A stretch of 64,000 nucleotides of DNA from Hyalangium minutum (GCF_000737315.1 NZ_JMCB01000004.1:1-64000), one strand, 5' to 3'; shown: positions 25,733-47,863, counted from the stretch's first letter. Numbers and translations are program-made. The notes: a model not told the origin generated them from the sequence alone.

Positions 25733-27049
25733 TTGAGAGACGTGGCCTCTGGAACGGATGTGCTGAGAGCACTGGGTGACTTCGAGCGTGCGTTCTGGCT
25801 GATGGATCAGACCCACAGCGTCAACTTCGCCATCATCGCGCACGTGAGAGGAGCGCTGGAGCCTCAGGTGCTCGAACGTGCGCTCGCGCTGCTTCAGGCC
25901 CGGCATCCGCTGCTGGGCGCCCGGATCACCGACTCCGGACCCGCCTCGTTCGGTAGGGGCGGGGTGCCACCCATTCCCCTACGTGAGGCGTCCCGTGGCT
26001 CCGAGGATCAGTGGCGCCAGGAGGTGGAGCACGAGCTGAATACTCCGCTGCCCTGGAGCCAGGGGCCGCTGGTGCGCGCCGTCCTCGTGCGAGCGGCGGA
26101 GCAGAGTGAGATCCTGCTCACCTTTCACCACTCGGCGGGAGATGGGCGCTCGGGGATGTACGCGATGAGGGATCTGCTCACGTTCGCGGCCTCGCTCATG
26201 GGCGGGGCGCCGGTGGCGGCGGAAGCCGTGCGATTCCCGCCCAGCATCGAGGAGCTGTCCGCTCCGCACGTGCGAGGGCTGCGGGCCTTCGGGCGGGTTG
26301 CGCGGTTCTTGGGCTCGACGGTGCTGGCGATGAGCCGGCGCCCCGGGAAGCTCCCCTCGCAGAGCCAGGAAGTGAAGGCGCGGACCGCCCTGCTCCATGG
26401 GGAGCTGTCCCCGGAAGAGGGCGAGCGGCTTCGTGCCCGCTGCCGAAAGGAGTCGGCCACGGTCCACGGAGTGCTCTGCGGCGCCATGCTCCGGGCGGCG
26501 GCGGCCCAGCTCGACGGCCTCACCCACTCCTCCAAGCCGCGCTTCCTGAGCTGCTATTCGCCCGTTGATCTGCGGGACATGTTCCAGGAGTCCGTGGCCC
26601 CAGGCGCCGTGGGCTATTTCCTGGGGATGGGGCTGAGCTTCCACCGCGTCGACCGTTCGGCGGAGATCTGGCCCCTGGCGCGCGAGGTGGGGGAGCGCCT
26701 GCGCACCATGCGGGAGGACGGCACCATCGTCGCTGCCACCCACTTCCAGAGCCGCGTACAGAAGGGCTGGGACGTGAAGACCGCCGCGAGCAGCGCGCCC
26801 CCGGTCACCGCCGCGGTGTCCAACCTCCGGGAGGTGGACATCCCCGGCCAGTACGGCCCGCTCGCCTTGGACGGTGTCCATTTCTCCCTGGCGAGCCATG
26901 GCTGGGGAACCGCCCCTGTGCTCACCGTGGCGACCTACCAGGGGCGCATGCAGTTGAACTTCACCTACAGCCTCCCTCGCGTGCCCGAGGAGTGGGGCCG
27001 CCAGGTGTTCGAGCGCGCCCTCGGGGAGCTTCGTGCCCTGGCCGCTTGA
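25733..27049 (+). CDS. Stand-alone condensation-domain/PapA5-like acyltransferase
   Basis: TTG start after GAGAGGGA; intact HHxxxDG (HHSAGDG, 26126-26146); RALGDFE N-terminus and SNL/TVATYQGRMQLNFTY C-terminal pattern typical of the CoA-dependent acyltransferase fold. Confidence 0.82.
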   Translation: MRDVASGTDVLRALGDFERAFWLMDQTHSVNFAIIAHVRGALEPQVLERALALLQARHPLLGARITDSGPASFGRGGVPPIPLREASRGSEDQWRQEVEHELNTPLPWSQGPLVRAVLVRAAEQSEILLTFHHSAGDGRSGMYAMRDLLTFAASLMGGAPVAAEAVRFPPSIEELSAPHVRGLRAFGRVARFLGSTVLAMSRRPGKLPSQSQEVKARTALLHGELSPEEGERLRARCRKESATVHGVLCGAMLRAAAAQLDGLTHSSKPRFLSCYSPVDLRDMFQESVAPGAVGYFLGMGLSFHRVDRSAEIWPLAREVGERLRTMREDGTIVAATHFQSRVQKGWDVKTAASSAPPVTAAVSNLREVDIPGQYGPLALDGVHFSLASHGWGTAPVLTVATYQGRMQLNFTYSLPRVPEEWGRQVFERALGELRALAA

Positions 27050-29287: not shown

Positions 29288-30682
29288 CTAGGCTGCCGCG
29301 GCGCGCCGGTACAGCTTCAGAGGCACCGTGTCCGGGCGCAGGTTGACGCCGACCACAAAGGGGGGCGGCTTCTGCTCGGTGTACTGCACCCGGTAGCGCT
29401 GCACGATCATGGCCAGGATGATCTGCATCTCCATCGAGGCGAAGTTCGTCCCGATGCACATGCGCATGCCCCCGCCGAACGGGAAGAAGGCCAGCCGGGG
29501 GCGCCCGGCGGAACGCTCGGGACTGAAGCGCTCCGGGTTGAACTTCTCGGGCTCCTCCCAGACGGCGGGGTGGCGGTGGGTGAGGTAGGGGCTGAGGGTG
29601 ATGATGTCTCCCTTGGACACCAGGTAGCCCCCGATGACGTCGTCGCTCATGGCCTCGCGGGGGAAGCTCCAGACAGGGGGGTACAGGCGCATGGACTCAT
29701 CGATGACCATGGCCGTGTACCGGAGCTTCGGCAGATCCTGCGCGGTGGGCACGCGGCCCTCGAGCACCGAGTCGACCTCGGCCTGGAGCTTCTCCCAGAC
29801 CTCGGGGTGGCTGCCCAGCAGGAACCACGTCCACCCCAGCGCGAACGTGGTGGTCTCATGCCCGGCGACGATGAGCGTCATCAGCTCGTCGCGGAGCTGC
29901 GCGTCGCTCATGCCCCCGCCCGTGTCCTCGTAGCGGGCCTCCAGCAGCATCTGGAGCAGATCCTGCGGAGGCTGAGCCTGCTTGCGCCGGGCCTCGATGA
30001 GGCCGAGCACCGCGCGGTTCAGCATGGCCATGTTCTTGTCGAACTCGCGGTTGGCCTTGGTCGGCAGGAACATCCGCAGCGGGTTGGCGGACAGGAGCCG
30101 TGCGCTGTTCTCGTGGGTGGCGCTGTACATCGCGTCCTCGAGCTCCGCGGCCCCGGGGTTGACGGTCCCGTTGAAGGCGTCACTGCTGAAGAGCGTCCGC
30201 GTGGTGATGGAGAGGGTGAGCCGCGTCATCTCCGGCATGATGTCCAGGACGGTGCCGTCGGGCAGGGCGTCCCAGTTTCGGAGATGGGCGCCCATCACCT
30301 GGACCATCTGGTCCACCAGGACGGCCAGCCTCTCGCGGTGGAAGGCGGGCTGGGCGAGCCTTCGCTGGCGTCTCCAGGACTCCCCGTCGTTGGTGATGAG
30401 CCCCTTGCCGAGGATGGGCTCGGCCCTGCGCAGCAGCTTGCTGCGGCCGTAGATGGTGGGGCGCTCCACCAGGATGTGCTTCACGTGGTCCGGGTGGGTG
30501 AAGTAGGTCACCCGGATCGGGCCCATCCGGTAGGAGATGACCTCGCCGTACTCGGCGAACCCTTGTGAGAGCAAGCCGAGTGGGTCCTTCTGCAACTCGA
30601 GGATGCTACCCAGGAGCCAGTGACCCTTGGGGCCGCTGGGCCTCCTCGGAGTGGAAGGAACTTGGGGTGCAGGCGACAGCAT
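29288..30682 (-). CDS. Cytochrome P450 (canonical)
   Basis: GGAGGAG RBS; AGHETT I-helix, ESMR (ExxR), PERF, FGGGMRMCIG. Confidence 0.95.
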   Translation of the reverse strand: MLSPAPQVPSTPRRPSGPKGHWLLGSILELQKDPLGLLSQGFAEYGEVISYRMGPIRVTYFTHPDHVKHILVERPTIYGRSKLLRRAEPILGKGLITNDGESWRRQRRLAQPAFHRERLAVLVDQMVQVMGAHLRNWDALPDGTVLDIMPEMTRLTLSITTRTLFSSDAFNGTVNPGAAELEDAMYSATHENSARLLSANPLRMFLPTKANREFDKNMAMLNRAVLGLIEARRKQAQPPQDLLQMLLEARYEDTGGGMSDAQLRDELMTLIVAGHETTTFALGWTWFLLGSHPEVWEKLQAEVDSVLEGRVPTAQDLPKLRYTAMVIDESMRLYPPVWSFPREAMSDDVIGGYLVSKGDIITLSPYLTHRHPAVWEEPEKFNPERFSPERSAGRPRLAFFPFGGGMRMCIGTNFASMEMQIILAMIVQRYRVQYTEQKPPPFVVGVNLRPDTVPLKLYRRAAAA

Positions 30683-30728: not shown

Positions 30729-32279
30729 CTACTTCGCCGCGGGGGCGTGCTGCACCGGCGGCACGTAGGGCCAGCTCTTGAGCGGTCCCTTGCCCGCGTC
30801 GCGCGAGATGTAGTCCGCGGCGATGTTGGCGCTCTCCATGATTGCGAGCAGTCCGCTGCCGGGGTGGGTGCCGCCGCCCACGAAGTACAGCCCGCTCACC
30901 TCCGTGTTCTTCACCCGAGGGCGCAGCGGCCCGAGCTGGTCCATGGTGTGGGCCAGGTTGAAGACGGCGCCGCGGAACACGTTGAAGTCATCCCGCCAGG
31001 TCTCCGCGGTCCAGGAGCGCCGGGCGCGGATGTGCTTGGTGATGTCGTGGATGCCCACCTTGGTGAGCAGCTCGGGGACGCGCTCGTTGAGTATCCGCTC
31101 GGCCTGCTTGAAGTCCACCGGGTGGCCGGTGTGGGGCGTGGGGATCGTGACGTAGAGCGTGGAGTGTCCCGGCGGCGCGACGGAGGGATCCGTGACGCAC
31201 GGGTTGCAGACGTAGAAGGGCGGATCCTCGGTGTCCACCGTCGTGTCCTCGAGCTTCGCGAGATCGTTCTTCAGGCCGTTGGCGGAGAAGGAGATCTGGT
31301 GGTGAGGCACGTCATAGACGCGATCCAGGCCCAGGTAGAGCATGAAGAGGCTGGGCGAGTACCGGGCCTTGTCCAGGAAGCCATCGGTCATGCGGCCCTT
31401 GCGCCAGCGCGCGTCCAGGAGGTTCTTGGCGGCGTAGGGCAGATCCGCGTTGACGACCACGGTGTCTGCCTTCAGGCGCTCGCCCGAGCTCAGCTCCACG
31501 CCGCGCGCCTTGCCCTCTTCGACCCAGATGCGGGAGACGGGCGTGCCCATCCGGAACTCCACGCCCAGATCCTGCGCGCACTTCATCATCCCTTGCGCCA
31601 TCGCACGGAAGCCGCCCTTGGGGTGCCACACGCCGAAGGCCAGCTCCAGGTAGGGGACGATGGAGAAGAGGCTGGTGGCGGTGGTGGGGTGCAGCCCCAG
31701 GTACTTGGAGGAGAAGGCGAACCCGTAGGTGATGCGGTCGTCTTTGAAGTAATCGTTGAAGTGCGAGTAGAGCGTCTGCCAGGGCTTGAAGCGCAGGTTG
31801 GGTCCCCACAGCCACGGCACGATGTACCCGGGGAGCGAGTCGGCTGGGGTGGCAACGAACTTGCCGTAGATGAAGCGGTACTTCTCCTCGGCATCGGCCA
31901 CCCAGCGCTTGAGGGCTGCGGGCTTGTCGGGGCCGAAGCGGGCCAGATCCGCGGCCATGCGCTCCGTGTCGCGGAAGGAGTCCATGTACGTGCCATCCCA
32001 GAACCAGGTACGGCTCATCGGCTCCACGGGCAGCAGGGTCACATAGTCTTCGAGCCGCTTGCCGGCGCGCTCGAAGGTTTTGAAGAGGATCTCGGGGACC
32101 TGGAAGATGGTGGGCCCGGTGTCGATCGTGTACTCGTTCTGTTCGCCGAGGGTCAGGCCCTTCATGCGGCCGCCGGGGACCGGATCCTTCTCCACGACGG
32201 TCACCTTCAGCCCGAGCCCTGCCAGGTTGATGGCGGACAACAAGCCTCCGGGGCCTGCTCCGACGATGAGGACGTCCAT
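30729..32279 (-). CDS. crtI: Phytoene desaturase family FAD oxidoreductase, close to myxobacterial CrtIa
   Basis: GAGPGG FAD motif, EK..PGGR, DTGPT, YLGLHP, C-terminal GLYFVGGGTHPGSGL CrtI signature. Confidence 0.9.
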   Translation of the reverse strand: MDVLIVGAGPGGLLSAINLAGLGLKVTVVEKDPVPGGRMKGLTLGEQNEYTIDTGPTIFQVPEILFKTFERAGKRLEDYVTLLPVEPMSRTWFWDGTYMDSFRDTERMAADLARFGPDKPAALKRWVADAEEKYRFIYGKFVATPADSLPGYIVPWLWGPNLRFKPWQTLYSHFNDYFKDDRITYGFAFSSKYLGLHPTTATSLFSIVPYLELAFGVWHPKGGFRAMAQGMMKCAQDLGVEFRMGTPVSRIWVEEGKARGVELSSGERLKADTVVVNADLPYAAKNLLDARWRKGRMTDGFLDKARYSPSLFMLYLGLDRVYDVPHHQISFSANGLKNDLAKLEDTTVDTEDPPFYVCNPCVTDPSVAPPGHSTLYVTIPTPHTGHPVDFKQAERILNERVPELLTKVGIHDITKHIRARRSWTAETWRDDFNVFRGAVFNLAHTMDQLGPLRPRVKNTEVSGLYFVGGGTHPGSGLLAIMESANIAADYISRDAGKGPLKSWPYVPPVQHAPAAK

Positions 32280-32425: not shown

Positions 32426-32524
32426 TGGCGGTAGGGCATGAGAATCGAACTCACCAGGGACCGTTCTCACGGCCCCTCACCGGTTTTGAAGACCGGGCCG
32501 GCCACCAGATCCGGAGGCCCTACC
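32426..32524 (-). tRNA. selC: tRNA-Sec (anticodon UCA)
   Basis: Minus strand reads GGTAGGGC...CCGGT-CTTCAAA-ACCGG...GGGGCCGT-GAGA-ACGGTCCC...GTGAG-TTCGATT-CTCAT-GCCCTACC-G-CCA. This gives an 8-bp acceptor stem, 5-bp T stem, long variable arm, TCA anticodon, G discriminator and encoded CCA (99 nt). Confidence 0.9.
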
Positions 32525-32578
32525 ACGCTCGACTCTACTGCCCGGCCAATGCCCCTCCGTCAACGATGCGCTCGATAA

Positions 32579-32740
32579 GAAAGCGCTGTCAGATCCAGAG
32601 GTGTTTGACGCATAAAGCCACAAATTGAAAAGGCAGTTTTGCGCTCCCACGCATAATTTTATGCGGTGATGGCAAAAGGTGGCATGAGTTTTTGAATGCG
32701 CTTTCATAAAGCGCTTTACTCCCTGGAAAAGACGCTTTAC
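32579..32740. promoter_or_regulatory. AT-rich intergenic array of LacI/GalR-type operator-like palindromes
   Basis: GAAAGCGCTGTC (32579-32590), TGAATGCGCTTTCA (32693-32706), perfect TAAAGCGCTTTA (32707-32718), GAAAAGACGCTTTAC (~32726-32740), plus CGCATAA-TT-TTATGCG (32650-32665). Confidence 0.55.
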
Positions 32741-32911
32741 ACTCGGTTCCAGAAAAGTGCCGAAGGGTCTCCTGCCGTTGGAATGACCTGGGCTGCGTTG
32801 CGCCCTGTGAGTCTGTCTTCAGAGGCACGGTTCCAAGCGCTGCATTGCGTCAGTTGACTCAACCCTTGATCGGCTCCGGGGCTGGATCTCCATGGGCCGA
32901 GAAGGAAGGCC

Positions 32912-35188
32912 ATGATCCATAAATCGTTGGGAGTCGCCGTCGTGTTGCTGATGGGCATCCTGGGAGCGGGCGAGAGCCTCGCCGCGCCCACCTATGGAGC
33001 CCAGAGCTCGGGGGCCAGCTCGGCCCTCTTCTATATCAACAGCACCTCGTGGGCGGACATCCACTACCGGGTCAACAATGGGGGCCAGGTCAACGTTCGG
33101 ATGACGCTCGTGGGCTCGCAGAACCAGTACACGGTGACGGGTCTCACCAGTGGCAGCGTCGTCACCTACAACTTCACGTACTGGGACGCCGCCTGTAACT
33201 GCGCCTTCGATACCGCCACGGCCACTTATACCCATGGCTCCTCGTCGCCTCCGGACGCGGGCACGGGCACTCCCGATGCGGGCTCCGGAACTCCGGACGC
33301 GGGCACGGGCACTCCGGACGCGGGTACCGGTGGCCCTACTGGCAGCGCGGTCCCCTTGTTCAACAGCACCACCCCGCTGGAGCCGGCCCTGGTGGAGAAC
33401 ACCTCCACGGCGATCATCACCCACGTGGGCGAGCGCGTGCGCGATCGCCATGCCCGCGAGTCCCAGTTCCAGGCGTATGACCACTTCCTGGGCAAGTACT
33501 TCGTCAACCGTACCTTCTACGTCGACATCATCGACGAGGTGGCCAAGGGCGGCAGCCAGATCACCGTCAACATGCACACCGTCTACCCACACGACGGCAC
33601 GAACTTCCGCGCGTTCTTCCGGGGCCTCAACACCGTCGCGGAGTACTTCCACAACGGCACCTTCACCCGCGTGAACGACTACCTCTACACCGCCAGCGTC
33701 AACTACAACGCCAAGGAGGGGCGTGCCATCCGGGTGGGCGATCGCATGGAGATCGAGATCGGCGTCTTCCTGAAGCAACCGGTGGACGGCCGCTTCAACT
33801 ATTACTCGGGGGCGTGGCTGTACATCGTGGGCCAGGGCGGCATCGTGCCCTTCGAGGGCGTCGGCTCCACGCTCGACTCCTTCCCCCTGCCGGAGACCGC
33901 GTGGGCGGGCGGACGGACCACGCAGAACTACCCGTATTCGAACGAGCCGGCCGAGCGCTTCATGCAGATGGCGCTGAACCTGGCCCCGGTCAACACTCAG
34001 ACGTTCGTCGAGGGCCGCCGGATCCACCACACGGACTTCGGTACGGGCGCTCACTCCGAGGCGGACAACCCGGTGTTCACCGAGCAGGCGAACAAGCTGG
34101 GGAACAGCTACATCGCGCGCTCGTGCGTGGCCTGCCACGTGAACAACGGCCGCGGCCTGCCTCCTGCCACCAACACCACGCTGACCAACCTCGTGGTCAA
34201 GGTGGGCAAGCTCAGCGGCTCCACGAACGTGTCGGATCCGCAGCTGGGCGCCAAGCTGCAGCCGCGCTCTGTCAGTGGCACCCCCGAGGCGGATGTGAAG
34301 ATCACCTCGTGGACCACGACCAATGGCACTTTCTCGGATGGCACGGCCTACCAGCTGCGCAAGCCCGTCTACGCCTTCAGCAACGTCATCCCCACGAACT
34401 ACTCGGCGCGCATGACGCCGCAGCTGGTGGGCTTGGGCCTGCTGGAGGCGGTGCCCGAGAGCGCCATCTTCGCCCTGGCCGATCCCAATGACGCCAACGG
34501 CGACGGCATCTCTGGCCGCATGAGCACCGTGGTGGACCCCCAGACGGGCCAGACCCGCATGGGCCGCTTCGGCTGGAAGGCGAGCCTGGCGCGGGTGCGC
34601 CACCAGGTCGCCGATGCGCTCAATGGCGACATGGGCGTCACCACGTCCGTGTACAGGTCGCTGGACTGCGGCTCGTCCCAGCAGGGCTGCACGGGCACCA
34701 GCACAGAGCTGAGTGACGCGGACCTGGACAAGCTCGTCCGCTACATCTCTCTCTTGGGCGTCAATGCCCGGCGCAACCTCAACGACACGCAGGCGCAGCG
34801 CGGCGAGACGCTCTTCCAGAGCGCCGGCTGCTCCAAGTGCCACACGGCCAGCCTGCCTACGAGCCCCTACCACCCGAACTCCGAGCTGCGCAGCCAGACG
34901 ATCCGTCCGTACACGGATCTGCTCCTGCACGACATGGGCTCGGGGCTGGCGGACAACCTGCCGGAGGGCACGGCCTCGGGCTCCGAGTGGCGCACCGCTC
35001 CCCTGTGGAGCATCGGCTGGACGGCGGGCGTCAGCGGCGGCGAGGCCTACCTGCACGACGGCCGCGCTCGCAACCTCTCCGAGGCCATCCTCTGGCACGG
35101 CGGTGAGGGCGAGGCCTCCAAGCAGTCCTTCGTGAGGATGTCCGCTGCGGACCGGGATGCGCTGATCAAGTTCCTCCAGTCCCTGTAA
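32912..35188 (+). CDS. Secreted CBM56-like / linker / di-heme oxidoreductase (DHOR family) fusion
   Basis: AGGAAGG RBS; signal peptide; WADIHYRVNNGGQVNVRM...YNFTY...AFDT CBM56-like module; PDAG repeats; CVACH (34124-34138) and CSKCH (34829-34843); DHOR motifs GLGLLEAVP, DPNDANGDGISGR, GRFGWKA, WRTAPLWSIG, YLHDGRARNL. Confidence 0.87.
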   Translation: MIHKSLGVAVVLLMGILGAGESLAAPTYGAQSSGASSALFYINSTSWADIHYRVNNGGQVNVRMTLVGSQNQYTVTGLTSGSVVTYNFTYWDAACNCAFDTATATYTHGSSSPPDAGTGTPDAGSGTPDAGTGTPDAGTGGPTGSAVPLFNSTTPLEPALVENTSTAIITHVGERVRDRHARESQFQAYDHFLGKYFVNRTFYVDIIDEVAKGGSQITVNMHTVYPHDGTNFRAFFRGLNTVAEYFHNGTFTRVNDYLYTASVNYNAKEGRAIRVGDRMEIEIGVFLKQPVDGRFNYYSGAWLYIVGQGGIVPFEGVGSTLDSFPLPETAWAGGRTTQNYPYSNEPAERFMQMALNLAPVNTQTFVEGRRIHHTDFGTGAHSEADNPVFTEQANKLGNSYIARSCVACHVNNGRGLPPATNTTLTNLVVKVGKLSGSTNVSDPQLGAKLQPRSVSGTPEADVKITSWTTTNGTFSDGTAYQLRKPVYAFSNVIPTNYSARMTPQLVGLGLLEAVPESAIFALADPNDANGDGISGRMSTVVDPQTGQTRMGRFGWKASLARVRHQVADALNGDMGVTTSVYRSLDCGSSQQGCTGTSTELSDADLDKLVRYISLLGVNARRNLNDTQAQRGETLFQSAGCSKCHTASLPTSPYHPNSELRSQTIRPYTDLLLHDMGSGLADNLPEGTASGSEWRTAPLWSIGWTAGVSGGEAYLHDGRARNLSEAILWHGGEGEASKQSFVRMSAADRDALIKFLQSL
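33251..33334 (+). repeat. 4 x 21-bp tandem repeat encoding a PDAG(T/S)G(T/G) linker
   Basis: ccggacgcgggcacgggcact-type units. Confidence 0.9.
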
Positions 35189-35208: not shown

Positions 35209-35239
35209 GGGGACCGCGTCACCACGCGGTCCCCTTTTT
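35209..35239 (+). terminator. Rho-independent terminator
   Basis: GGGGACCGCGT-CACC-ACGCGGTCCCC perfect 11-bp stem followed by TTTTT. Confidence 0.9.
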
Positions 35240-35263
35240 ATTTGCGGGAGAGGGCTGCGCTGC

Positions 35264-36349
35264 TCAGTCCAGCCCGCGCTCCCAGAGGTCGTCCTCGTCC
35301 AGCCCCACGAGGTGCCCCACCTCGTGCATCACGGTGATGCCGATCTGCTCGATCAGCTCCTCGCGCGTCTTCGCGAAGCGCTCCAGGTTCCTCTGGTACA
35401 GCACGATCGCCGCCGGGAAGTGATCGTACGCGTTCGTCACGCTCCGCTCGCCCACCGGCGTTCCCCGGAACACCCCCAGGATGCATGGCGACAGGGGAGG
35501 GGTCTGATCCATCAGCTCTTCATCCGACGGGATGTCCTCCACGGAGATCGTCACGTTGTCCAGGTAGCCCTTCACGTGCTCTGGAAGCGCCTTCACCGCC
35601 GACTCGAGCGCCTGATCGAACTCCGGCTCCGCCAACGACACCGGCGGCGGGAACTCCTGCGGCGCCAACGCCTGCGCCTTCCCGAACCGCTTCTTGGCCT
35701 CCTTCGCATCCCCGCGCCGCTCCGCTATCAGCCCCAGGTAGTGGTGCGCCCAGGCCTCGTCCGGCGTGTCCTTCAGCACCTTCTCGAAGGACGCCTGCGA
35801 CTCCTTGAAGCGGCACAGCTCGAACAGCGCGATGGCTCGCTCCACCTGCGCATCGATCGAGCGCGGCATGTGCCCGAGCGCTTCCTCCAGGCTCTCCAGC
35901 GCCTGGGTGCACTCGCCCATCTGGTTCAGGCCCATCCCTTCCAAGAGGAGGAACTCGTACACATGCTCTACATCGTCCGCTCGTTCCGCCAGCTTCCGCC
36001 CACGGCCACACAGGGTGAGCCCTTCCTCCACCGCGTCGCGATCTTCTCCCATCCGGCAGAGGAGGAAGTCCGCCATCTCCAGGATCAGCTCCAGATCCTC
36101 TGGGCTCGCCTCCAAAGCCTGTTGATACGCTTGCACCGCTTCTTCCTGGCGCCCAAGCCCCGCGAGCGCTGCCGCTCGATAGTGCAGCGCCTCCGGCTGC
36201 CCTGGCGCCTCCTTCAGCAGCGCTTGTGTCTTCTCCAGCGCGCCTTCCAGATCCTCGGCGTCGAACGCCGCGGCGATCTGTTCCAGGCGCTGCTCCGAGT
36301 CCCCCGGCAATGAGCGTTTCTCCCGCTTCCCCATCATGAGCGGCCTCAT
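35264..36349 (-). CDS. TPR-containing minimal zincin (Zincin_1-like) metallopeptidase
   Basis: Start at ATG 36349 with GAGGGA RBS; several TPR helices; C-terminal ILGVFRG...IVLYQRN...TVMHEVGHLVGLDEDDL. Confidence 0.85.
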   Translation of the reverse strand: MRPLMMGKREKRSLPGDSEQRLEQIAAAFDAEDLEGALEKTQALLKEAPGQPEALHYRAAALAGLGRQEEAVQAYQQALEASPEDLELILEMADFLLCRMGEDRDAVEEGLTLCGRGRKLAERADDVEHVYEFLLLEGMGLNQMGECTQALESLEEALGHMPRSIDAQVERAIALFELCRFKESQASFEKVLKDTPDEAWAHHYLGLIAERRGDAKEAKKRFGKAQALAPQEFPPPVSLAEPEFDQALESAVKALPEHVKGYLDNVTISVEDIPSDEELMDQTPPLSPCILGVFRGTPVGERSVTNAYDHFPAAIVLYQRNLERFAKTREELIEQIGITVMHEVGHLVGLDEDDLWERGLD

Positions 36350-36436
36350 ATCCAGGTCCCTCTGTACGTTGTCAACGCAGGGAGCGGTTGTTACTTTCGC
36401 TCTTTCCCTGAGTCCCCAGGGACAGGTGTCCCTTTC

Positions 36437-36793
36437 GTGAACATCCTCGTCGTCGATGATGACCTCAGCCTGTGCGCCAGTCTCTCCCAGTTTTTGGAGG
36501 GGAACGGCTACACGGTCTATTCGGCCGGCGACGCCCTCCAGGCCTTGGACGTCATGGAGCGCCAGCCCGTGGAGCTCATCATCACCGATTATTTGATGCC
36601 CCACGTGGATGGCATCCGTTTCACCGAGATGCTCAAGGCGGATCCCCGCTTTACGGAGATCCCCGTGCTCCTCATCACCGCCTCCCCGGACGTGGCCACC
36701 ACCGACAAGGGCCTGCGCAGGGGCGTGGCCATGATGCTCCAGAAGCCGGTGGACATGGGCCAGCTCCTGACGCTGGTCCGCTTCGCCGAGTAG
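36437..36793 (+). CDS. Single-domain response regulator
   Basis: ILVVDDD, ITDYLMP phosphoacceptor Asp, LITA, QKP. Confidence 0.9.
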   Translation: MNILVVDDDLSLCASLSQFLEGNGYTVYSAGDALQALDVMERQPVELIITDYLMPHVDGIRFTEMLKADPRFTEIPVLLITASPDVATTDKGLRRGVAMMLQKPVDMGQLLTLVRFAE

Positions 36794-36843
36794 GCCCGAG
36801 GACCTTCCAGCCGTCCTACCGTCTACACCCTCGGCTTTCCGTG

Positions 36844-36896
36844 TTGACATCCCCCGTGCGGCCCTTATTTTGGCGCTCGCCGAGGCCGAGTGCTAA
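36844..36896 (+). promoter_or_regulatory. sigma70-type promoter and CIRCE (HrcA operator) upstream of groEL
   Basis: TTGACA at 36844-36849; TTGGCGCTC-N9-GAGTGCTAA at 36870-36896, two mismatches to TTAGCACTC-N9-GAGTGCTAA. Confidence 0.85.
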
Positions 36897-36938: not shown

Positions 36939-38588
<1,650 letters not shown>

Positions 38589-38634: not shown

Positions 38635-38677
38635 CGGCCCCGGTGTCCTCGAGAGAGGCCCGGGGCCGTTGCTTTTT
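38635..38677 (+). terminator. Terminator after groEL
   Basis: CGGCCCCGG...CCGGGGCCG stem followed by TTGCTTTTT. Confidence 0.6.
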
Positions 38678-40188
38678 CAGGGCGTGCCCAGCTTCAGGGC
38701 GCGGGACAGCTCGCGGCTGAGCGCGGGCGCGTCGAAGAAGAGCCGAGGCAGGCAGGCGATGGCGCCGGCCCGCAGCGAGTCCAGCGTCGTCTCCATGGTG
38801 AGGTGCTCCACCAGGACGATGAAGGGCGCGCCCTGGGCCAGGGCCTTGCCCAGCTCCAGCGCCTTGCGGCCGTACGCCGGGGTGAAGTCCCAGCTCACCA
38901 CCACCGCCATGGGAGGCTCCATCGCGGCGATCTCCGTGGTGCTAATGAGCCGCGGCTCCAGTCCCAGGCGGGTGAGCGCCTCCATGACGGTGCGCGAGGA
39001 GGTGGCGTTGTCGTCGATGACGTCCACGCGCCGCCCGGTGGCCGTCCGGGGCTGCGCCGGAGGCGAGGCGATGGCCGCGCGGATGAGGGCACGCACCTGG
39101 CGGATGTCGTCGAAGGGCTTGAGCAGGTAGTCCATCACCCCCAGCTCCAGCGCCTCCTGCGTGGTGCCCAGCGAGGGGTAGCCCGTCATCAACAGGATGC
39201 GGGCCTGCGGGTTCATCATCCGCGCCTGCTGAGCCAGCGCCAGGCCGGACAGGCCCGGGAGGTTCTTGTCGGTGACGATGAGGTCCACGCGCTCGTTGCG
39301 CAGCAGATCGAGCGCTTCCTCGGCCGTGCCCGCCTCGAGCACCTCGAACTCCTTGCCCAGCAGGTCCCGGAAGACCATGCGGATGATGCTCTCGTCATCG
39401 ACGATGAGCACTCGCTTGCGCTGGGTGGTGGGCACCTCGACAGTTGCGGGGAAGGAGATTCGGAAGACGGTGGAAGGCGGCGGCTGGTCCGGCAGCGTGT
39501 CCGTGGGCGCCAGGCTGATCTGCGCCCGGTGTTCCTGGGCAATCCGCTTGCACACCGCGAGCCCCAGCCCCGTGCCGCGCTTGCTGCTGGAGACGTAGGG
39601 CTCGAAGATCTTCTCCCGCATCTCCCGGGGAATGCCGGGGCCCCAGTCCGCCACGTACAGGACGGGTGCGCTGCCCTCCAGCGTCAGCAGCACCTTGATG
39701 CGCCCCCGGCCGCCCATGGCGTCGCGCGCGTTGTTGAGCAGGTTGAGGGTGAGCTGCTCCAGGAGCCGGGCGTTGCCCTGAACGGTGATGGTCTCCGGGG
39801 CCTCCACCTCCAGCGAGATGCGGGCGGAGTCCGGGTTGAGCGAGAAGAGCTTGGCCGCGGCCCACACGGGGGTGGCCAGCGACAGGCGCTGCTGGGGCGC
39901 CGTCCGGTCGCTGGAGAGGCGGACGAAGTCAGAGATGATCTGCTCCATCCGCTCCACCTGGGCCAGCAGCAGCTTGAGCGGGCCTACGGTGCCGGTCTCT
40001 TCCGCCAGCAGCTGGGCGTAGGCCTTCACCCCTAGCAGGGGCTGGCGCAGCTCGTGCAGCACCTCGGCGGCCAGCTGGGTCGAGCCAGGCCCCGAGCGCT
40101 GCAGGGCCGCGGCCGCGGCCTTTGCCGTTGCCAGGTCACCAACCTCCAAGGCTTGCAGGAGATGAGCGAGCGGGGCAGGAGTCTCCAT
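38677..40188 (-). CDS. sinK: Hybrid histidine kinase/response regulator, SinK-like
   Basis: HELRQPL H-box, NLLNNA, DWGPGI, GTGLGL, REC (IVDDE, TDKNLP, KP) and a degenerate second REC; lies next to groEL and encC as recalled for Myxococcus. Confidence 0.8.
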   Translation of the reverse strand: METPAPLAHLLQALEVGDLATAKAAAAALQRSGPGSTQLAAEVLHELRQPLLGVKAYAQLLAEETGTVGPLKLLLAQVERMEQIISDFVRLSSDRTAPQQRLSLATPVWAAAKLFSLNPDSARISLEVEAPETITVQGNARLLEQLTLNLLNNARDAMGGRGRIKVLLTLEGSAPVLYVADWGPGIPREMREKIFEPYVSSSKRGTGLGLAVCKRIAQEHRAQISLAPTDTLPDQPPPSTVFRISFPATVEVPTTQRKRVLIVDDESIIRMVFRDLLGKEFEVLEAGTAEEALDLLRNERVDLIVTDKNLPGLSGLALAQQARMMNPQARILLMTGYPSLGTTQEALELGVMDYLLKPFDDIRQVRALIRAAIASPPAQPRTATGRRVDVIDDNATSSRTVMEALTRLGLEPRLISTTEIAAMEPPMAVVVSWDFTPAYGRKALELGKALAQGAPFIVLVEHLTMETTLDSLRAGAIACLPRLFFDAPALSRELSRALKLGTP

Positions 40189-44354: not shown

Positions 44355-44404
44355 TTGCCGTAATCCGACCCTGATTGCCTGCCGGCCCACTGGGCCGGCC
44401 TCTT

Positions 44405-47400
44405 ATGACTGACACCATTGAACTGTCCAAGGCCTACGAGCCCACCGAGGTGGAGGCCCGCTGGTCGAAGTTCTGGCTGGAGCGGAAGTACTTCCACGCC
44501 GAGTCCACATCCGACAAGCCGCCGTTCTCCATCGTGCTGCCGCCGCCCAACGTGACGGGCAGCCTGCACCTGGGACACGCGCTCACGGCCACCATCGAAG
44601 ACACGCTCATCCGCTGGAAGCGCATGAGCGGCTACAACGCGCTCTGGATGCCGGGCACGGATCACGCCGGCATCGCCACGCAGATGGTGGTGGAGAAGGA
44701 GCTGAAGAAGACGGAGAAGAAGAGCCGTCACGATCTGGGCCGCCCGGAGTTCCTCAAGCGCGTCTGGCAGTGGAAGGACAAGTTCGGCAAGCGCATTGGC
44801 GAGCAGCACCAGTTCCTCGGCGCCTCGCTGGACTGGGAGCGCGAGCGCTTCACCATGGACGAGAAGTCCTCGGCCGCGGTGCGCGAAGTTTTTGTCCGGC
44901 TGCACGAAGAGGGGCTCATCTACCGGGCCCAGAAGCTCATCAACTGGTGTCCCTCGTGCCATACGGCGCTGAGCGACCTCGAAGTGGATCACGACGAGGG
45001 GAAGAAGGGCTCGCTGTGGCACATCCGCTACCCGGTGAAGGGGACGGATCGGGCGCTCACGGTGGCCACCACCCGCCCGGAGACGATGCTGGGCGACACC
45101 GCGGTGGCCATCCACCCGGATGACGAGCGCTACAAGGGGCTGGCGGGCGGCACGGTGGTGCTCCCGCTGATCAACCGTGAGATCCCCATCATCGCGGACG
45201 CCGAGCTGGTCAGCATGGAGTTCGGCACGGGCGTGGTGAAGGTGACGCCGGCGCACGACTTCAACGACTACCAGACGGGGCTCCGGCACAACCTGCCGAT
45301 GATCTCCATCTTCGATGACAACGCGCGCACCAACAAGGAAGCGGGGCCCTACGCGGGGATGGACCGCTACGAGGCGCGCAAGAAGGTCCTCGAGGACCTG
45401 ACGCTGCAGGGACTGCTGGAGAAGGAAGAGCCGCACACGCTCTCCGTGGGCCAGTGCCAGCGGTGCCAAACGGTGGTGGAGCCGCGGCTGTCCATGCAGT
45501 GGTGGGTGAAGATCGAGCCGCTGGCCAAGCCCGCCATTGAGGCGGTGGCGCAGGGCCGCACCAAGTTCGTCCCCGAGTCATGGACGAACACCTACTTCCA
45601 GTGGATGGAGAACATCCACGACTGGTGCATCAGCCGCCAGCTGTGGTGGGGCCACCAGATCCCCGCCTACTACTGCACGGCGTGCAGCCCGCGCGTGGGC
45701 GATGACACGGATCTGCCCGAGGGTGCGCCCACGGTGCGCGTGGGCGGCGTGGACTTCAACCGCGCCGAGCCGATTGTCTCGCGCCAGCAGCCCTCGCACT
45801 GCCCCAAGTGCAACGGCACGAACTTCACCCAGGATCCGGACGTGCTGGACACCTGGTTCAGCTCCGCGCTGTGGCCGTTCTCCACGCTGGGCTGGCCGGA
45901 GCAGACGCCCGAGCTGAAGACCTTCTACCCGACGTCCGTCATGGAGACGGGCCACGACATCATCTTCTTCTGGGTCGCCCGGATGATGATGATGGGCCTG
46001 CACTTCATGGGGGATGTGCCCTTCCGCACCGTGTACCTGCACGCGATGGTGCGCGACGAGAAGGGCGAGAAGATGTCGAAGACGAAGGGGAACGTCATTG
46101 ATCCCCTCGACATCATCCTCGGGTCTCAGGCGGAGAACCTCAACCCCACGCTGCGCAACAAGTTCCCCCAGGGCATGCCGGCGTTCGGCGCGGACGCGCT
46201 GCGCTTCACTCTCGCCTCGCTCACGCAGCAGGGGCGCGACATCAAGCTCTCCATGGATCGCGTGGCGGGCTACAAGGCGTTCTGCAACAAGCTGTGGAAC
46301 GCCAGCCGCTTCGTGCTGATGAACCTGGGCGGCTTCCGGCTCGACACGCGCCCCATCAAGGAGCGCCAGCTGACGCTGGCGGACCGGTGGATCCTCGCGC
46401 GGCTGCAGCGCGCCATCGTGGACACGCGCCTGGCGCTGGAGACGTACGCGTTCTCGGACGCGGCCTCCACGCTCTACCAGTTCCTCTGGTCCGAGTTCTG
46501 TGACTGGTACATCGAGTTGTCCAAGGGCTCGCTCTACGGCGACGACGAGAAGTCCAAGGACAGCACCCGCGCGGTGCTGGTGTTCTGCCTGGAGCGCATG
46601 CTTCGGCTGCTGCACCCGTTCATGCCGTTCATCACCGAGGAGATCTGGCAGAAGCTGCCGATCCCGCGGTCGGTGGACTCGATCATGATCTCGCCGTACC
46701 CGGAGCCGGACTCGCGGCTGGCGGACTTCGCGGCGGAGACGGAGATGGCGCCCGTGGTGGCGGCCATCGAGGGCATCCGCACCATTCGCGGCGAGAGTAA
46801 CTTGCCACCCTCGGCCAAGCTGGTGGCGCACGTGCAGAGCGCTGATGCGGCGCTGAGGGCCACGCTGGAGCGGTGCAGCAACTACCTGCTGCCGCTGGCG
46901 GGCCTGTCCGAGGTCCGCATCGAGGCTCCGGGCCGCAAGCCGGTGCAGGCCGCGGCGTACGTGGGCTCGGGGCTGGAGATCTACGTGCCGCTGGCCGGGC
47001 TCATCGACGTGGATGCGGAGCGAGACCGTTTGGGTAAGGAGCTGGCGCGGGCGGATCAGGAACTGGCGAGCGTGCTGCGCAAGCTAGAGAACCCGAACTT
47101 CGTCGCCAAGGCTCCGCCAGATGTCGTGGAGAAGGATCGGGCCCGCGTGGAAGAGCTGAAGGCCCGCAAGACAAAGCTGCAGGAGAACCTCGATCGGCTG
47201 GCCCCGGAGGCACCTATGTCCGAAGAGACCCCGCCTGAAGCAGCGGAGGAGAAGCTCCCTGATGCGCAGACGTCCCAGGTGAAGGTGGCGCCGCCAAGCG
47301 CCCCCACGGCGGATGCCGTGGACCTGAGCAAGGAGCTGAAGGGAGAGCTCGAGGCCAGCGGGGAGGTCGTGAACCCGCAGATCACCGACGCGCTGAACAA

Positions 47401-47863
47401 GCTCCGCGAGAGCACCAAGGAAGGCCTGTCCGCCAAGGACCACGAGGACCTGGGCGTGGCGTACATGAGCATGGGGCTCGTGGACGACGCCCAGCGTGAG
47501 TTCGACAAGGCCAAGCAGGGCGGGGAGGGCAGTGCTCAGCCCGCTTCAGCGCCTGCGAAGAAGGCCCCGGCCAAGAAGGCTCCGGCCAAGAAGGCTCCGG
47601 CCAAGAAGGCTCCGGCCAAGAAGGCTCCGGCCAAGAAGGCTCCGGCCAAGAAGGCTTCGGCGAAGAAGGCCGCTGCGGCGAAGAAGGCTCCTGCCAAGAA
47701 GGTCGCGGCGAAGAAGGCTCCGGCCAAGAAGGCGGCTGCCAAGAAGGCTGGGACGCGGAAGGCTCCGGCGAAGAAGGTCGCGGCGAAGAAGGCGCCTGCC
47801 AAGAAGGCTGCGGCGAAGAAGGCACCCGCGAAGAAGTCCACGGCCAAGAAGGCCCGGCGGTAA
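44405..47863 (+). CDS. valS: Valine--tRNA ligase with C-terminal TPR-like and histone-H1-like extension
   Basis: [13 protein letters not shown] (HIGH), [17 protein letters not shown]-terminal coiled coil, then a ~215-aa extension. Confidence 0.97.
47549..47860 (+). repeat. APAKK/AAKK low-complexity repeat, including 5 identical 15-bp units GCTCCGGCCAAGAAG (47579-47653)
   Basis: Read directly from the sequence. Confidence 0.95.

What the first reader, a model, noticed from the sequence alone, without database searches (positions are those of the whole stretch)
32912..35188. CBM56-like beta-1,3-glucan-binding module fused to a di-heme oxidoreductase: candidate fungal-wall-targeted redox enzyme
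Architecture: signal peptide, a module matching the CBM56 pattern as I recall it from Bacillus beta-1,3-glucanases (WVDVHYKVN...QNVRM...YFFTY...YDT), a PDAG linker, an unassigned ~190-aa domain, and a DHOR domain with two CxxCH. DHOR proteins are largely uncharacterised. Glucan targeting, LacI-like operators and its own terminator suggest a stand-alone, sugar-induced oxidative enzyme for attacking fungal or oomycete prey walls, or an electron donor for such attack.
Basis: partly seen in the sequence, partly recalled or inferred. Interest (0 to 1): 0.75.

Follow-up and report, generated by a model that had tools for sequence, protein, structure and literature searches.

The report
Glucan-anchored two-haem enzyme, sugar-regulated
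This myxobacterial gene encodes an exported two-haem protein with a beta-1,3-glucan anchor; relatives are fused to, or sit in operons with, beta-1,3-glucanases, so it is a good candidate for an undescribed oxidative helper enzyme in beta-glucan (e.g. fungal wall) breakdown.

Summary
ORF 32912..35188 (+) encodes 758 aa: signal peptide, full-length CBM56 (Pfam E=1e-23), a PDAG repeat linker, a ~200-aa beta-rich domain with no Pfam match, and a two-CxxCH DHOR/DUF1111 region. The predicted fold of that region matches only the bacterial cytochrome c peroxidase/MauG superfamily, and only weakly.

The unassigned domain plus the dihaem part form an obligate core found in only ~300 50%-identity clusters (Myxococcota, Planctomycetota, Verrucomicrobiota, some Gammaproteobacteria). 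Elsewhere this core is fused to CBM6, CBM35, CBM32-like modules and CBM4_9. In several proteins it shares a polypeptide with GH16, GH81 or GH128-type beta-1,3-glucanase domains.

A lipoprotein paralogue, with CBM56 inserted next to haem 1, lies in lacI–GH1–paralogue–CBM56-GH16–ABC-transporter clusters in Hyalangium and Vitiosangium. The 28-nt operator/promoter cassette of those clusters also occurs upstream of the window gene.

A Corallococcus secretome reports an 81.4-kDa "CBM56" protein, probably the orthologue, induced by chitin or straw.

Best reading: a LacI-repressed, exported, glucan-docked, peroxide- or O2-activating dihaem enzyme that assists beta-1,3-glucanases. The chemistry and the fungal target are untested. 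I found no paper describing this family.

The parts
32578..32591 (+). Distal LacI-type operator-like palindrome AGAAAGCGCTGTCA
   Evidence: It has 2 mismatches to TGAAAGCGCTTTCA. It aligns with a related site in the Vitiosangium paralogue promoter.
32693..32706 (+). Main operator-like palindrome TGAATGCGCTTTCA, overlapping a -35-like TTGAAT (32692-32697)
   Evidence: It has 1 mismatch to the perfect palindrome. The identical 14-mer lies upstream of the Vitiosangium paralogue, next to a lacI gene. Four such sites lie in the Hyalangium cluster, against 0.2 expected.
32706..32719 (+). Second, overlapping palindrome ATAAAGCGCTTTAC (inner 12 bp perfect), window-specific
   Evidence: Read from the sequence. 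It is not present in L013 or L088.
32714..32720 (+). Conserved CTTTACT block, a candidate -10 region 17 nt after TTGAAT
   Evidence: The composite TGAWWGCGCWTTCA-N7-CTTTACT occurs once in the window, with 0 of 100 shuffles giving a match. Among 88 loci it occurs only upstream of the L013 and L088 paralogues. The promoter assignment is my inference.
32912..35188 (+). CDS, 758 aa plus stop: exported CBM56 / beta-domain / dihaem protein
   Evidence: GC3 is 0.91.
32912..32983 (+). Sec signal peptide (residues 1-24, cleavage after SLA)
   Evidence: Read from the sequence. The AF2 model shows an N-terminal helix with low pLDDT. No signal-peptide predictor was run.
32993..33214 (+). CBM56 beta-1,3-glucan-binding module (residues 28-101)
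   Evidence: Pfam E=1e-23. PDB sequence hits to solved CBM56 modules. Foldseek match to 5t7a with TM 0.82.
33239..33349 (+). Pro/Asp/Gly/Thr linker with four PDAG(T/S)G repeats
   Evidence: Tandem repeat at 33249-33324, period 21, 3.6 copies. pLDDT is below 50 for residues 113-143.
33350..33946 (+). Family-specific beta-rich domain (residues 147-345), carrying the RxRDRHARE motif and many invariant Arg, Asp, Glu and Tyr residues
   Evidence: No Pfam hit at E<=10. Only 298 clusters match among 1.84 billion representatives. Apart from fragments, it is followed by two CxxCH motifs. AF2 predicts about 13 strands, mostly with pLDDT 80-97. Invariant residues are listed.
33947..34711 (+). Haem-1 domain (residues 346-600): GRRIHHTDF..G.HSE, CVACH 405-409 (34124-34138), a beta insert at 427-501, and RFGWKA..Q565..D573-M574
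   Evidence: Foldseek on the 326-758 model gives only bCCP/MauG-superfamily hits. In paralogues, CBM56 is inserted about 17 residues after the haem-1 His.
34712..35185 (+). Haem-2 domain (residues 601-758): CSKCH 640-644 (34829-34843), H673-D-M, W693, W699, YLHDGRA 713-719, W728-H729
   Evidence: Pfam DHOR and Cytochrom_C hits. phmmer aligns it with the C-terminal haem domain of P. aeruginosa CCP, placing H729 at the position of Met275.
35209..35244 (+). Intrinsic terminator: GGGGACCGCGT-CACC-ACGCGGTCCCC followed by a T-run
   Evidence: There is no T-run on the opposite strand, so it serves the + gene.

Best explanation
The gene encodes a Sec-exported c-type dihaem protein that docks on insoluble beta-1,3-glucan through its N-terminal CBM56. 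I propose it acts as a redox accessory enzyme for beta-1,3-glucanases.

Proposed sequence of events, each step marked shown or inferred:
1. A LacI-family repressor encoded elsewhere in the genome binds TGAATGCGCTTTCA, which overlaps the promoter, and is released by a beta-glucan breakdown product. The operator conservation is shown; binding and the inducer are inferred.
2. The protein is exported, and both CxxCH sites receive haem in the periplasm. This is inferred from the motifs.
3. The protein is released from the cell. This is supported only by a probable orthologue in a Corallococcus secretome.
4. [quoted passage not shown] This rests on homology.
5. The family-specific beta domain together with haem 1 forms the active site. 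Haem 1 is the equivalent of the peroxide-reactive haem of CCP/MauG, with invariant Gln565 and near-invariant Asp573. Haem 2 (His644, probably with His729) stores or relays the second oxidising equivalent or incoming electrons. All of this is inferred.
6. With H2O2 or O2 the enzyme oxidises the glucan surface, by chain scission or by introducing carbonyl/aldonic groups. This opens the substrate to GH16, GH81 and GH128 endoglucanases. This step is inferred and is the least certain.
For: Architecture.

Obligate, rare core: the beta domain occurs in 298 50%-identity clusters. Apart from fragments, it is followed by two CxxCH motifs.

Fusions: of 52 representatives, 7 carry CBM56, 8 F5/8-type-C, 6 CBM6, 5 CBM35_2 and 2 CBM4_9, and single members carry PA14, ricin-B or dockerin.

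Single-polypeptide fusions with glucanase domains:
- GH16: P0145, P0147, P0150, P0167, P0173.
- SKN1/KRE6 (GH16-like) only: P0146.
- GH81: P0157.
- Glyco_hydro_cc: one member.

Neighbourhood:
- GH16 genes lie in 8 of 80 loci, and are same-strand neighbours (gaps of 34-230 bp) in four loci: Vitiosangium plus three Verrucomicrobiota/Opitutales MAGs.
- LacI genes lie in 7 of 80 loci.
- Hyalangium has lacI-GH1-paralogue-CBM56-GH16-ABC transporter.
- Vitiosangium has lacI-paralogue-CBM56-GH16.

Shared operator/promoter cassette.

Fold: the dihaem model hits only hydrazine synthase gamma, MbnH, BccP, MauG, CCPs, MacA and YhjA. CCP Met275 aligns with invariant His729.

CBM56 is inserted next to haem 1 in the paralogues.

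Secretome: PMC10875029 supplement lists a 'CBM56(24-112)' protein of 81.359 kDa seen only with straw/cellulose or chitin. Corallococcus orthologues weigh 81.1-81.8 kDa.
Against: - No biochemical data exist for any member.
- Known CCP/MauG-superfamily enzymes oxidise electron-rich substrates: cytochromes, Trp side chains, alkenes and N-oxides (my knowledge). Carbohydrate C-H activation by a His-ligated c-haem would be unprecedented.
- Foldseek support is weak (E from 3e-4 to 0.1, TM 0.3-0.46), and that model has pLDDT of only 73.6.
- The mapping of Gln565, Asp573 and Trp555 onto CCP/MauG catalytic residues is my manual reading. phmmer of the haem-1 domain found no CCP.
- The window gene and its orthologues in M. 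xanthus, C. fuscus and Vitiosangium have unrelated neighbours.
- The operator cassette is absent upstream of most myxobacterial orthologues.
- The secretome identification rests on one peptide, and its identity with the orthologue was not verified.
- No electron or peroxide source is identified.
Confidence: 0.5

Rival explanations
1. It is a glucan-anchored peroxidase whose substrate is not the glucan. It might remove H2O2 at the polysaccharide surface, protecting secreted hydrolases or the predator. It might instead oxidise wall-bound proteins, phenolics or melanin, or metal ions, as proposed for classical DHOR partners of imelysin/EfeO-like proteins.
For: The fold places it in the peroxidase/MauG superfamily. 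MauG and MbnH act on protein Trp residues (my knowledge). DUF1111 is discussed as a dihaem peroxidase in iron-uptake operons (PMC3143127; bioRxiv 10.1101/072470). This chemistry is better precedented than glycan oxidation.
Against: - No imelysin, EfeO or DUF1513 partner lies nearby.
- Covalent fusion to GH16 and GH81 domains and to glucan-specific CBMs, including in aquatic-MAG phyla (Planctomycetota, Verrucomicrobiota) whose likely beta-1,3-glucan is laminarin (a soluble algal glucan without wall matrix, my knowledge), points to the glycan itself.
- The extra invariant beta domain is unexplained by simple peroxide scavenging.
Confidence: 0.25
2. It is a polysaccharide-tethered electron shuttle. 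It would be analogous to the c-type cytochrome domain CjX183 of Cellvibrio Cbp2D, passing electrons to another redox enzyme (an LPMO or an oxidase) at the substrate surface.
For: A CBM combined with a c-type cytochrome has a precedent: CjX183 reduces and activates LPMOs (PMC8981238). In locus L001 a core-only member follows a PA14 plus cytochrome c gene.
Against: - A 600-aa invariant core with a CCP/MauG-like two-domain fold and a conserved distal-pocket-like Gln/Asp is far more than an electron carrier needs.
- No LPMO or other redox partner appears in any of the neighbourhoods inspected.
- The fusions are to hydrolases, not to redox enzymes.
Confidence: 0.15
3. It is a non-catalytic beta-glucan-binding or adhesion protein, with the haems serving a structural or sensing role.
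For: Only the CBM has an assignable function. Many relatives carry adhesin-like modules such as fn3, TSP3, He_PIG and cadherin-like domains.
Against: Both CxxCH motifs and about 30 further polar residues are invariant across four or more phyla. The gene sits in operons with catabolic genes.
Confidence: 0.03

Closest known systems
Bacterial dihaem cytochrome c peroxidase / MauG superfamily (CcpA, MauG, MbnH, MacA, BccP, YhjA, hydrazine synthase gamma)
   Same: It has two c-type haems in two class-I cytochrome c-like domains. These were the only fold matches for residues 326-758. The C-terminal domain aligns with the electron-transfer haem domain of P. aeruginosa CCP. It carries an FWDGRA-like YLHDGRA motif, and in the haem-1 domain a candidate distal Gln plus acidic residue (my reading).
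   Different: - There is no PF03150 hit, and no PDB sequence hit beyond the short motifs.
- TM scores are only 0.3-0.46.
- The position of the Met or Tyr sixth ligand is occupied by His729.
- It has a ~75-aa beta insert after haem 1 and an extra 200-aa N-terminal beta domain.
- It is appended to CBMs and glycoside hydrolases, which I know of for no characterised member.
Classical DHOR/DUF1111 (PF06537) proteins of imelysin/EfeO-like iron-uptake operons
   Same: It scores well above the Pfam threshold (240 bits against 22) over the C-terminal 287 model positions. Databases give it the same annotations: 'di-heme oxidoreductase family', 'thiol oxidoreductase', 'CxxC motif-containing DUF1111'.
   Different: Model positions 1-212 do not match. 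The family-specific beta domain is absent from the model. No imelysin, EfeO or DUF1513 genes lie nearby, whereas those define the classical context. The associations here are with glucanases, CBMs and sugar regulators.
Cbp2D/Cbp2E of Cellvibrio japonicus (CBM2 plus c-type cytochrome domain CjX183)
   Same: Both are secreted, CBM-tethered c-type haem proteins implicated in oxidative polysaccharide breakdown (PMC8981238).
   Different: CjX183 is described as a small c-type cytochrome that acts as an LPMO reductant. Here the module is a ~600-aa dihaem, peroxidase-like core with its own conserved putative active site. No sequence match to it appeared in the PDB searches.
Lytic polysaccharide monooxygenases (copper AA families)
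   Same: Both have a modular CBM-linked architecture, fusion to or co-regulation with endo-acting hydrolases, and a beta-sandwich domain. The presumed role is oxidative loosening of a recalcitrant polysaccharide.
   Different: There is no His-brace: the mature N-terminus is predicted to be Ala. There is no LPMO Pfam hit. The cofactor is haem c rather than copper. [quoted passage not shown]
CBM56-containing beta-1,3-glucanases (BH0236 GH81-CBM6-CBM56, PbBgl64A CBM56-GH64, BglH)
   Same: It has a homologous CBM56 with the conserved W/Y-x-D-x-H-(Y/L)-K/R-V-N-x-G-x-Q motif. The combination CBM6 + CBM56 + GH81 recurs in the long family members (PMC7915573).
   Different: The catalytic partner here is a dihaem module instead of a glycoside hydrolase. 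The myxobacterial CBM56 carries an extra C-x-C pair (C95, C97).
RoxA (extracellular dihaem rubber oxygenase)
   Same: It is a precedent, from my knowledge, for a secreted ~75-kDa dihaem c-type enzyme of the CCP/MauG superfamily that cleaves an insoluble polymer oxidatively.
   Different: RoxA was not among the top 50 fold hits and gave no sequence hit. Its substrate is a polyene, not a glycan.

Membership tests
CBM56 (PF22184) | Full-length match to the family profile above the curated threshold | tested here: met
   83.8 bits against a 27-bit cut-off, model 1-75/75, E=1e-23.
CBM56 (PF22184) | Homology and fold shared with solved CBM56 modules | tested here: met
   phmmer hits 7quz (6e-13), 5h9y, 6a6c and 5t7a. 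Foldseek matches 5t7a with TM 0.82.
CBM56 (PF22184) | Binding of beta-1,3-glucan (laminarin, curdlan) | not testable with these tools
   The D49-x-H51 motif is conserved. The binding residues I recall for BhCBM56 could not be checked, because that paper is not held.
DHOR / DUF1111 (PF06537) | Profile match above the gathering score | tested here: met
   240.4 bits against 22. All 52 representatives match.
DHOR / DUF1111 (PF06537) | Match over the whole 499-position model | tested here: not met
   Only model positions 213-499 align (residues 498-758). The same is true in every relative tested.
DHOR / DUF1111 (PF06537) | Two c-type haem attachment motifs | tested here: met
   CVACH 405-409 and CSKCH 640-644 are invariant in 44 and in 52 sequences.
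DHOR / DUF1111 (PF06537) | Classical genomic context with imelysin/EfeO-like and DUF1513 genes | tested here: not met
   None appears in the window or in any of the inspected loci. No such family appeared among the conserved-neighbour clusters that were annotated for the 80 loci.
bCCP/MauG superfamily | Two-domain dihaem cytochrome c fold | tested here: inconclusive
   The only fold hits are members of this superfamily, but at E from 3e-4 to 0.1 and TM 0.3-0.46, from a model with pLDDT 73.6.
bCCP/MauG superfamily | Match to the CCP_MauG sequence profile (PF03150) | tested here: not met
   No hit at E<=1. The NCBIfam CytoC_perox hit is at E=0.045 and covers the haem motif only.
bCCP/MauG superfamily | Inter-haem Trp, a distal Gln/Glu pair at the reactive haem, and a Ca2+ site | tested here: inconclusive
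   RFGW555KA..Q565..D573-M574 resembles FWDGRA..Q..EM. Trp555 is conserved in 38/44, Gln565 in 44/44 and Asp573 in 42/44. The register is uncertain, and phmmer gives no alignment. The Ca2+ site cannot be tested.
LPMO (copper auxiliary activities) | N-terminal histidine brace on a beta-sandwich, with copper as cofactor | tested here: not met
   There is no LPMO family hit. The predicted mature N-terminus is Ala25. The beta domain is internal.
MbnP-like or imelysin-like metal-binding partner fused to the dihaem (idea tested) | Sequence match of residues 147-345 to MbnP or Peptidase_M75/imelysin models | tested here: not met
   Neither Pfam at E<=10 nor NCBIfam at E<=1 gives such a hit.
LacI-family regulon | 14-bp palindromic operator with central CG, overlapping the promoter | tested here: met
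   Sites at 32693-32706 and 32578-32591. The composite with CTTTACT is unique in the window, with 0 of 100 shuffles giving a match.
LacI-family regulon | The same operator next to a LacI gene and its regulated genes in relatives | tested here: met
   L013 has 3 sites against 0.27 expected, including one before lacI. L088 has 4 sites against 0.20 expected, before lacI, GH1 and the paralogue. The LacI domains are confirmed.
LacI-family regulon | Cognate regulator encoded nearby, and binding demonstrated | tested here: not met
   tblastn with the L013 LacI finds nothing in the 64-kb window. Binding cannot be tested here.

The most novel reading that the evidence does not exclude
The beta-domain plus dihaem core is a haem-dependent lytic polysaccharide oxidase or peroxygenase. 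[quoted passage not shown] That would make it a new CAZy auxiliary-activity family and a new reaction type for the CCP/MauG superfamily.
Probability: 0.25. Interest if true: 0.92.

Novelty: new variant of a known kind. Interest (0 to 1): 0.78.

Why it matters
Oxidative polysaccharide cleavage is currently the preserve of copper LPMOs, and to my knowledge no oxidative enzyme is known for beta-1,3-glucan. Beta-1,3-glucan is the main structural polymer of fungal and oomycete walls and, as laminarin, a major marine carbon pool.

A conserved dihaem module is here repeatedly welded to beta-1,3-glucanases and glucan-binding modules, and placed in sugar-regulated beta-glucan operons in four or more phyla. 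That makes a concrete, testable candidate for such an activity.

If confirmed, it would:
- extend the chemistry of the CCP/MauG superfamily;
- give the largely uncharacterised DUF1111 family a second function;
- bear on myxobacterial predation of fungi and on marine laminarin turnover;
- offer a new enzyme class for antifungal or biomass applications.

Even the conservative outcome, a glucan-tethered peroxidase, would correct the widespread 'thiol oxidoreductase' annotation. That name is an artefact of the CxxC inside the CxxCH haem motifs.

Tried and rejected
1. Foldseek with the full-length model gave CBM56 and then only poor tandem-FN3 alignments (rmsd above 20 Å). This says no more than 'beta-sandwiches' about residues 147-345. 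With both prediction jobs used, the beta domain could not be searched on its own.
2. Profile and single-sequence searches of PDB sequences found no solved DHOR relative. The haem-1 domain alone hit nothing meaningful.
3. Pfam at E<=10 on the beta domain from eight diverse members found nothing. The idea that it is a fused MbnP-like or imelysin-like metal-binding partner has no sequence support.
4. A conserved operon around the window gene was rejected. Neighbours differ in the window, M. xanthus, C. fuscus and Vitiosangium.
5. The operator motif upstream of other myxobacterial orthologues is absent at <=2 mismatches. The regulon membership is therefore lineage-restricted.
6. The third window match, at 35582, lies inside the neighbouring coding region and is probably chance.
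7. Sulfatase (22/80 loci), DUF1501, DUF1552, PSD and 3-keto-disaccharide-hydrolase neighbours are probably background, because these families are very abundant in Planctomycetota and Verrucomicrobiota genomes (the judgement is my knowledge).
8. No riboswitch lies in the ~190-nt leader.
None found a paper on a CBM-linked DHOR. Two searches returned only noise.
10. Technical failures: an 87-sequence alignment failed, one alignment was oversized, and one was too diverse for the locus search.
11. The accession of the Corallococcus secretome protein could not be matched to an orthologue cluster.
Full report
OBSERVATION

The ORF 32912..35188 (+) exists as described. It encodes 758 aa from the first possible start codon. 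Its GC3 is 0.91, against 0.59 for the 759-aa antisense ORF, so the + frame is the gene.

Pfam gives a full-length CBM_56 match at residues 28-101 (E=1e-23). It also gives a DHOR (PF06537) match at E=4e-71, but that match covers only model positions 213-499, which are residues 498-758.

The CBM56 assignment has three independent supports:
- phmmer hits to solved CBM56 modules of beta-1,3-glucanases: 7quz, 5h9y, 6a6c and 5t7a;
- a structural match of the AlphaFold model to BhCBM56, TM 0.82;
- conservation of the W-x-D-x-H-Y-(K/R)-V-N-x-G-x-Q signature.

The linker is a 21-bp unit repeated 3.6 times, encoding PDAG(T/S)G. The two haem motifs are CVACH 405-409 and CSKCH 640-644. A strong hairpin plus T-run lies 20 nt after the stop codon. 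The gene sits between a tRNA-Sec gene on the minus strand and a convergent TPR/zincin gene, so it is monocistronic.

Residues 147-345 are a beta-rich domain of about 13 strands, mostly with pLDDT 80-97. It has no Pfam match even at E<=10 in eight diverse members.

A search of 1.84 billion cluster representatives with residues 147-400 found only 298 clusters at E<=1e-3. Apart from fragments, those proteins have the domain followed by two CxxCH motifs about 215-235 residues apart. The beta domain and the dihaem region therefore form one obligate core of about 610 aa. The core-only form exists as P0110, 646 aa.

Residues invariant or nearly invariant across 44 and across 52 sequences:
- R175, R177, R179, H180, R182 and E183 (the RxRDRHARE motif);
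- H373, H381 and E383;
- both CxxCH motifs;
- Q565 and D573;
- H673, W693, W699, H715 and W728-H729.

FOLD OF THE DIHAEM PART

No solved structure is detectable by sequence.

A model of residues 326-758 (pLDDT 73.6) matches, among PDB entries, essentially only the bacterial cytochrome c peroxidase/MauG superfamily. The hits are hydrazine synthase gamma (E=3e-4), MbnH (6e-3), BccP, MauG, several CCPs, MacA and YhjA, at TM 0.3-0.46. The match is specific but distant.

phmmer aligns the C-terminal domain with the electron-transfer haem domain of P. aeruginosa CCP. This puts invariant His729 where CCP has its Met275 ligand.

In the haem-1 domain, RFGW555KA..Q565..D573-M574 resembles the FWDGRA..Q..EM segment. 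That segment carries the inter-haem Trp and the distal Gln/Glu of the peroxide-reactive haem in CCP and MauG. This is my reading and the register is uncertain.

The database names 'thiol oxidoreductase' and 'CxxC motif-containing protein' come from the CxxC inside CxxCH. They should not be taken as function.

WHAT THE FAMILY KEEPS COMPANY WITH

Pfam scans of 52 representatives show the core joined to many modules:

| Module | Members of 52 |
|---|---|
| F5/8-type-C | 8 |
| CBM56 | 7 |
| Lipoprotein_15 repeats | 7 |
| CBM6 | 6 |
| fn3 | 6 |
| CBM35_2 | 5 |
| TSP3 | 3 |
| CBM4_9 | 2 |
| PA14, ricin-B, dockerin | single cases |

The longest members are single polypeptides that combine a glycoside hydrolase with the core:
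- GH16: P0145, P0147, P0150, P0167, P0173;
- SKN1/KRE6 (GH16-like) only: P0146;
- GH81: P0157;
- Glyco_hydro_cc, which I recall as GH128: one member.

These usually follow the order GH - CBM6/35 - CBM56 - TSP3 - Lipoprotein_15 - core. GH81 members and laminarinase-type GH16 members are beta-1,3-glucanases (PMC9609564 and PMC7915573 for GH81/CBM56).

A scan of one genome per species found relatives in at least 163 species. These are Myxococcota, Planctomycetota (Pirellulales), Verrucomicrobiota (Akkermansiaceae, Roseibacillus, Opitutales), Gammaproteobacteria MAGs, Binatia and Chthonomonadales.

I clustered all ORFs of 80 loci. GH16 genes appear in 8 loci and are same-strand neighbours (gaps of 34-230 bp) in four. 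LacI-family regulators appear in 7 loci.

THE PARALOGUE AND THE REGULON

Archangiaceae and Myxococcaceae carry a second copy. It has a lipobox instead of the N-terminal CBM56. Its CBM56 is inserted about 17 residues after the haem-1 histidine. This places the glucan-binding module beside haem 1.

In Hyalangium rubrum this paralogue lies in a co-directional cluster: lacI - GH1 - paralogue - CBM56-GH16 - sugar-binding protein - ABC ATPase - permease. In Vitiosangium the cluster is lacI - paralogue - CBM56-GH16.

Both clusters carry palindromes of the type TGAAAGCGCTTTCA:
- Hyalangium has four, in front of lacI, GH1 and the paralogue, against 0.20 expected and with 0 of 200 shuffles reaching four.
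- Vitiosangium has three, against 0.27 expected, including one in front of lacI.

The window has TGAATGCGCTTTCA at 32693, identical to the Vitiosangium site, and AGAAAGCGCTGTCA at 32578. The surrounding promoter blocks align between the window and Vitiosangium.

The composite TGAWWGCGCWTTCA-N7-CTTTACT occurs once in the 64-kb window, with 0 of 100 shuffles giving a match. Among 88 loci it occurs only upstream of those two paralogues. In the window and in Hyalangium it ends 192 nt before the start codon.

I read TTGAAT-17 nt-TTTACT as the promoter, with the operator over the -35 box.

No lacI or GH16 gene lies in the window, so the repressor would act in trans. The motif is absent from most other orthologues' upstream regions, so this wiring is lineage-specific.

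EXPERIMENTAL HINT

In the Corallococcus silvisoli secretome, a protein annotated only 'CBM56(24-112)' was found with straw/cellulose or chitin but not in the blank (PMC10875029 and its supplement). It is 81.359 kDa and was identified by one peptide. Corallococcus orthologues are 81.1-81.8 kDa with the CBM56 at the same position. The identity is likely but could not be verified.

MECHANISM

Shown:
- the export signal;
- a bona fide CBM56 by homology;
- two c-haem sites;
- a rare obligate core;
- repeated fusion to, and co-regulation with, beta-1,3-glucan degrading genes;
- a shared LacI-type operator.

Inferred:
- the protein is secreted and docks on insoluble beta-1,3-glucan;
- haem 1, flanked by the beta domain, activates H2O2 or O2;
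- haem 2 (His644, probably with His729) relays or stores an oxidising equivalent, as in MauG and CCP;
- the enzyme oxidises the glucan surface and so assists endoglucanases.

Direct glycan oxidation is the weakest step, because known superfamily members oxidise electron-rich substrates. The rivals are:
- a glucan-tethered peroxidase acting on something else (0.25);
- an electron shuttle like CjX183 of Cbp2D (PMC8981238) (0.15);
- a non-catalytic binder (0.03).

KNOWN OR NEW

The sequences are in databases under generic names. DUF1111 is discussed only as an EfeB-like dihaem peroxidase of imelysin operons (PMC3143127; bioRxiv 10.1101/072470).

Ten full-text searches found nothing on a CBM- or GH-linked DHOR.

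It is a member of CBM56 and, over its C-terminal half, of PF06537. It is not a member of PF03150 or of any LPMO family.

I class it as a new variant of known kinds: the CCP/MauG-type dihaem enzymes and the CBM-tethered redox helpers. It has a real chance of being a new auxiliary activity.

LIMITS

- There is no biochemistry for any member.
- The fold evidence is weak.
- The beta domain's fold class is unresolved.
- The organism is not identified beyond an Archangiaceae-like myxobacterium; the closest orthologues are 75-78% identical, in Vitiosangium, Cystobacter, Hyalangium and Archangium.
- 'Fungal prey' is plausible but untested.

Noticed in passing
window 32426-32524 (-): A tRNA-Sec gene (anticodon TCA) lies immediately upstream of the finding's promoter region. 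ARAGORN finds it, and Rfam RF01852 scores it at 71.6 bits. I did not look for selenoprotein or sel genes.
   Followed up: partly
window 4-20502 (+), 25733-27049 (+), 29288-30682 (-), 30729-32279 (-): There is a type I modular polyketide synthase cluster. Three giant ORFs carry KS, AT, DH, ER, KR and ACP domains. They are followed by a PapA/condensation-like gene, a cytochrome P450 and an FAD-dependent amine-oxidase/desaturase-like gene. The finding sits just beyond the cluster's edge.
   Followed up: partly
window residues C95 and C97 of the CDS (about 33194-33202): The myxobacterial CBM56 carries a conserved C-x-C pair (WDAACNCAFD, with WDTACNCAYD and WDVSCDCARD in orthologues). The three solved Firmicute CBM56 modules whose alignments reach this position have a 2-residue gap there. 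It may be a disulfide or a metal site.
   Followed up: no
L013 7770-10109; L088 5001-7202; proteins P0052, P0053, P0062: The paralogues have a lipobox (LACG or SACG) instead of the N-terminal CBM56, and a CBM56 inserted inside the dihaem domain right after the haem-1 motif. This is an unusual domain insertion into a cytochrome fold.
   Followed up: yes
L001 5195-7972 (+), upstream of 8001-9941: In a contig of undetermined taxonomy (its DUF1501 and DUF7133 genes suggest a planctomycete or verrucomicrobial origin), a core-only family member is preceded by 29 nt by a 925-aa PA14 plus cytochrome c protein. This could be a redox or binding partner.
   Followed up: no
L006-L085 (80 loci): Sulfatase genes neighbour family members in 22 of 80 loci, and 3-keto-disaccharide-hydrolase-domain genes in 5. 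This may be background in Planctomycetota and Verrucomicrobiota, or may hint that some members act on sulfated algal glycans.
   Followed up: partly
proteins P0132, P0145, P0147, P0151, P0157, P0176, P0059: Lipoprotein_15 (PF03640, 'secreted repeat of unknown function') repeats recur just N-terminal to the core in 7 of 52 representatives. In most of the listed long members they are the last recognised module before the core. Their role is unknown.
   Followed up: no
window 35582-35595: A third operator-like 14-mer (TGGAAGCGCCTTCA, 2 mismatches) lies inside the coding region of the convergent TPR/zincin gene. It is probably chance.
   Followed up: no
window 35264-36850 (-), 36437-36793 (+), 36939-38588 (+), 38677-40188 (-), 44375-47863 (+): The downstream neighbours are unrelated to the finding: a TPR plus Zincin_1 protein, a stand-alone response regulator that overlaps the 5' part of that ORF on the other strand, GroEL, a hybrid histidine kinase, and valyl-tRNA synthetase.
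   Followed up: partly
window 32721-32911: If the promoter assignment is right, the leader is about 190 nt long. The distance from the cassette to the start codon (192 nt) is the same in the Hyalangium paralogue. No Rfam family matches it.
   Followed up: partly
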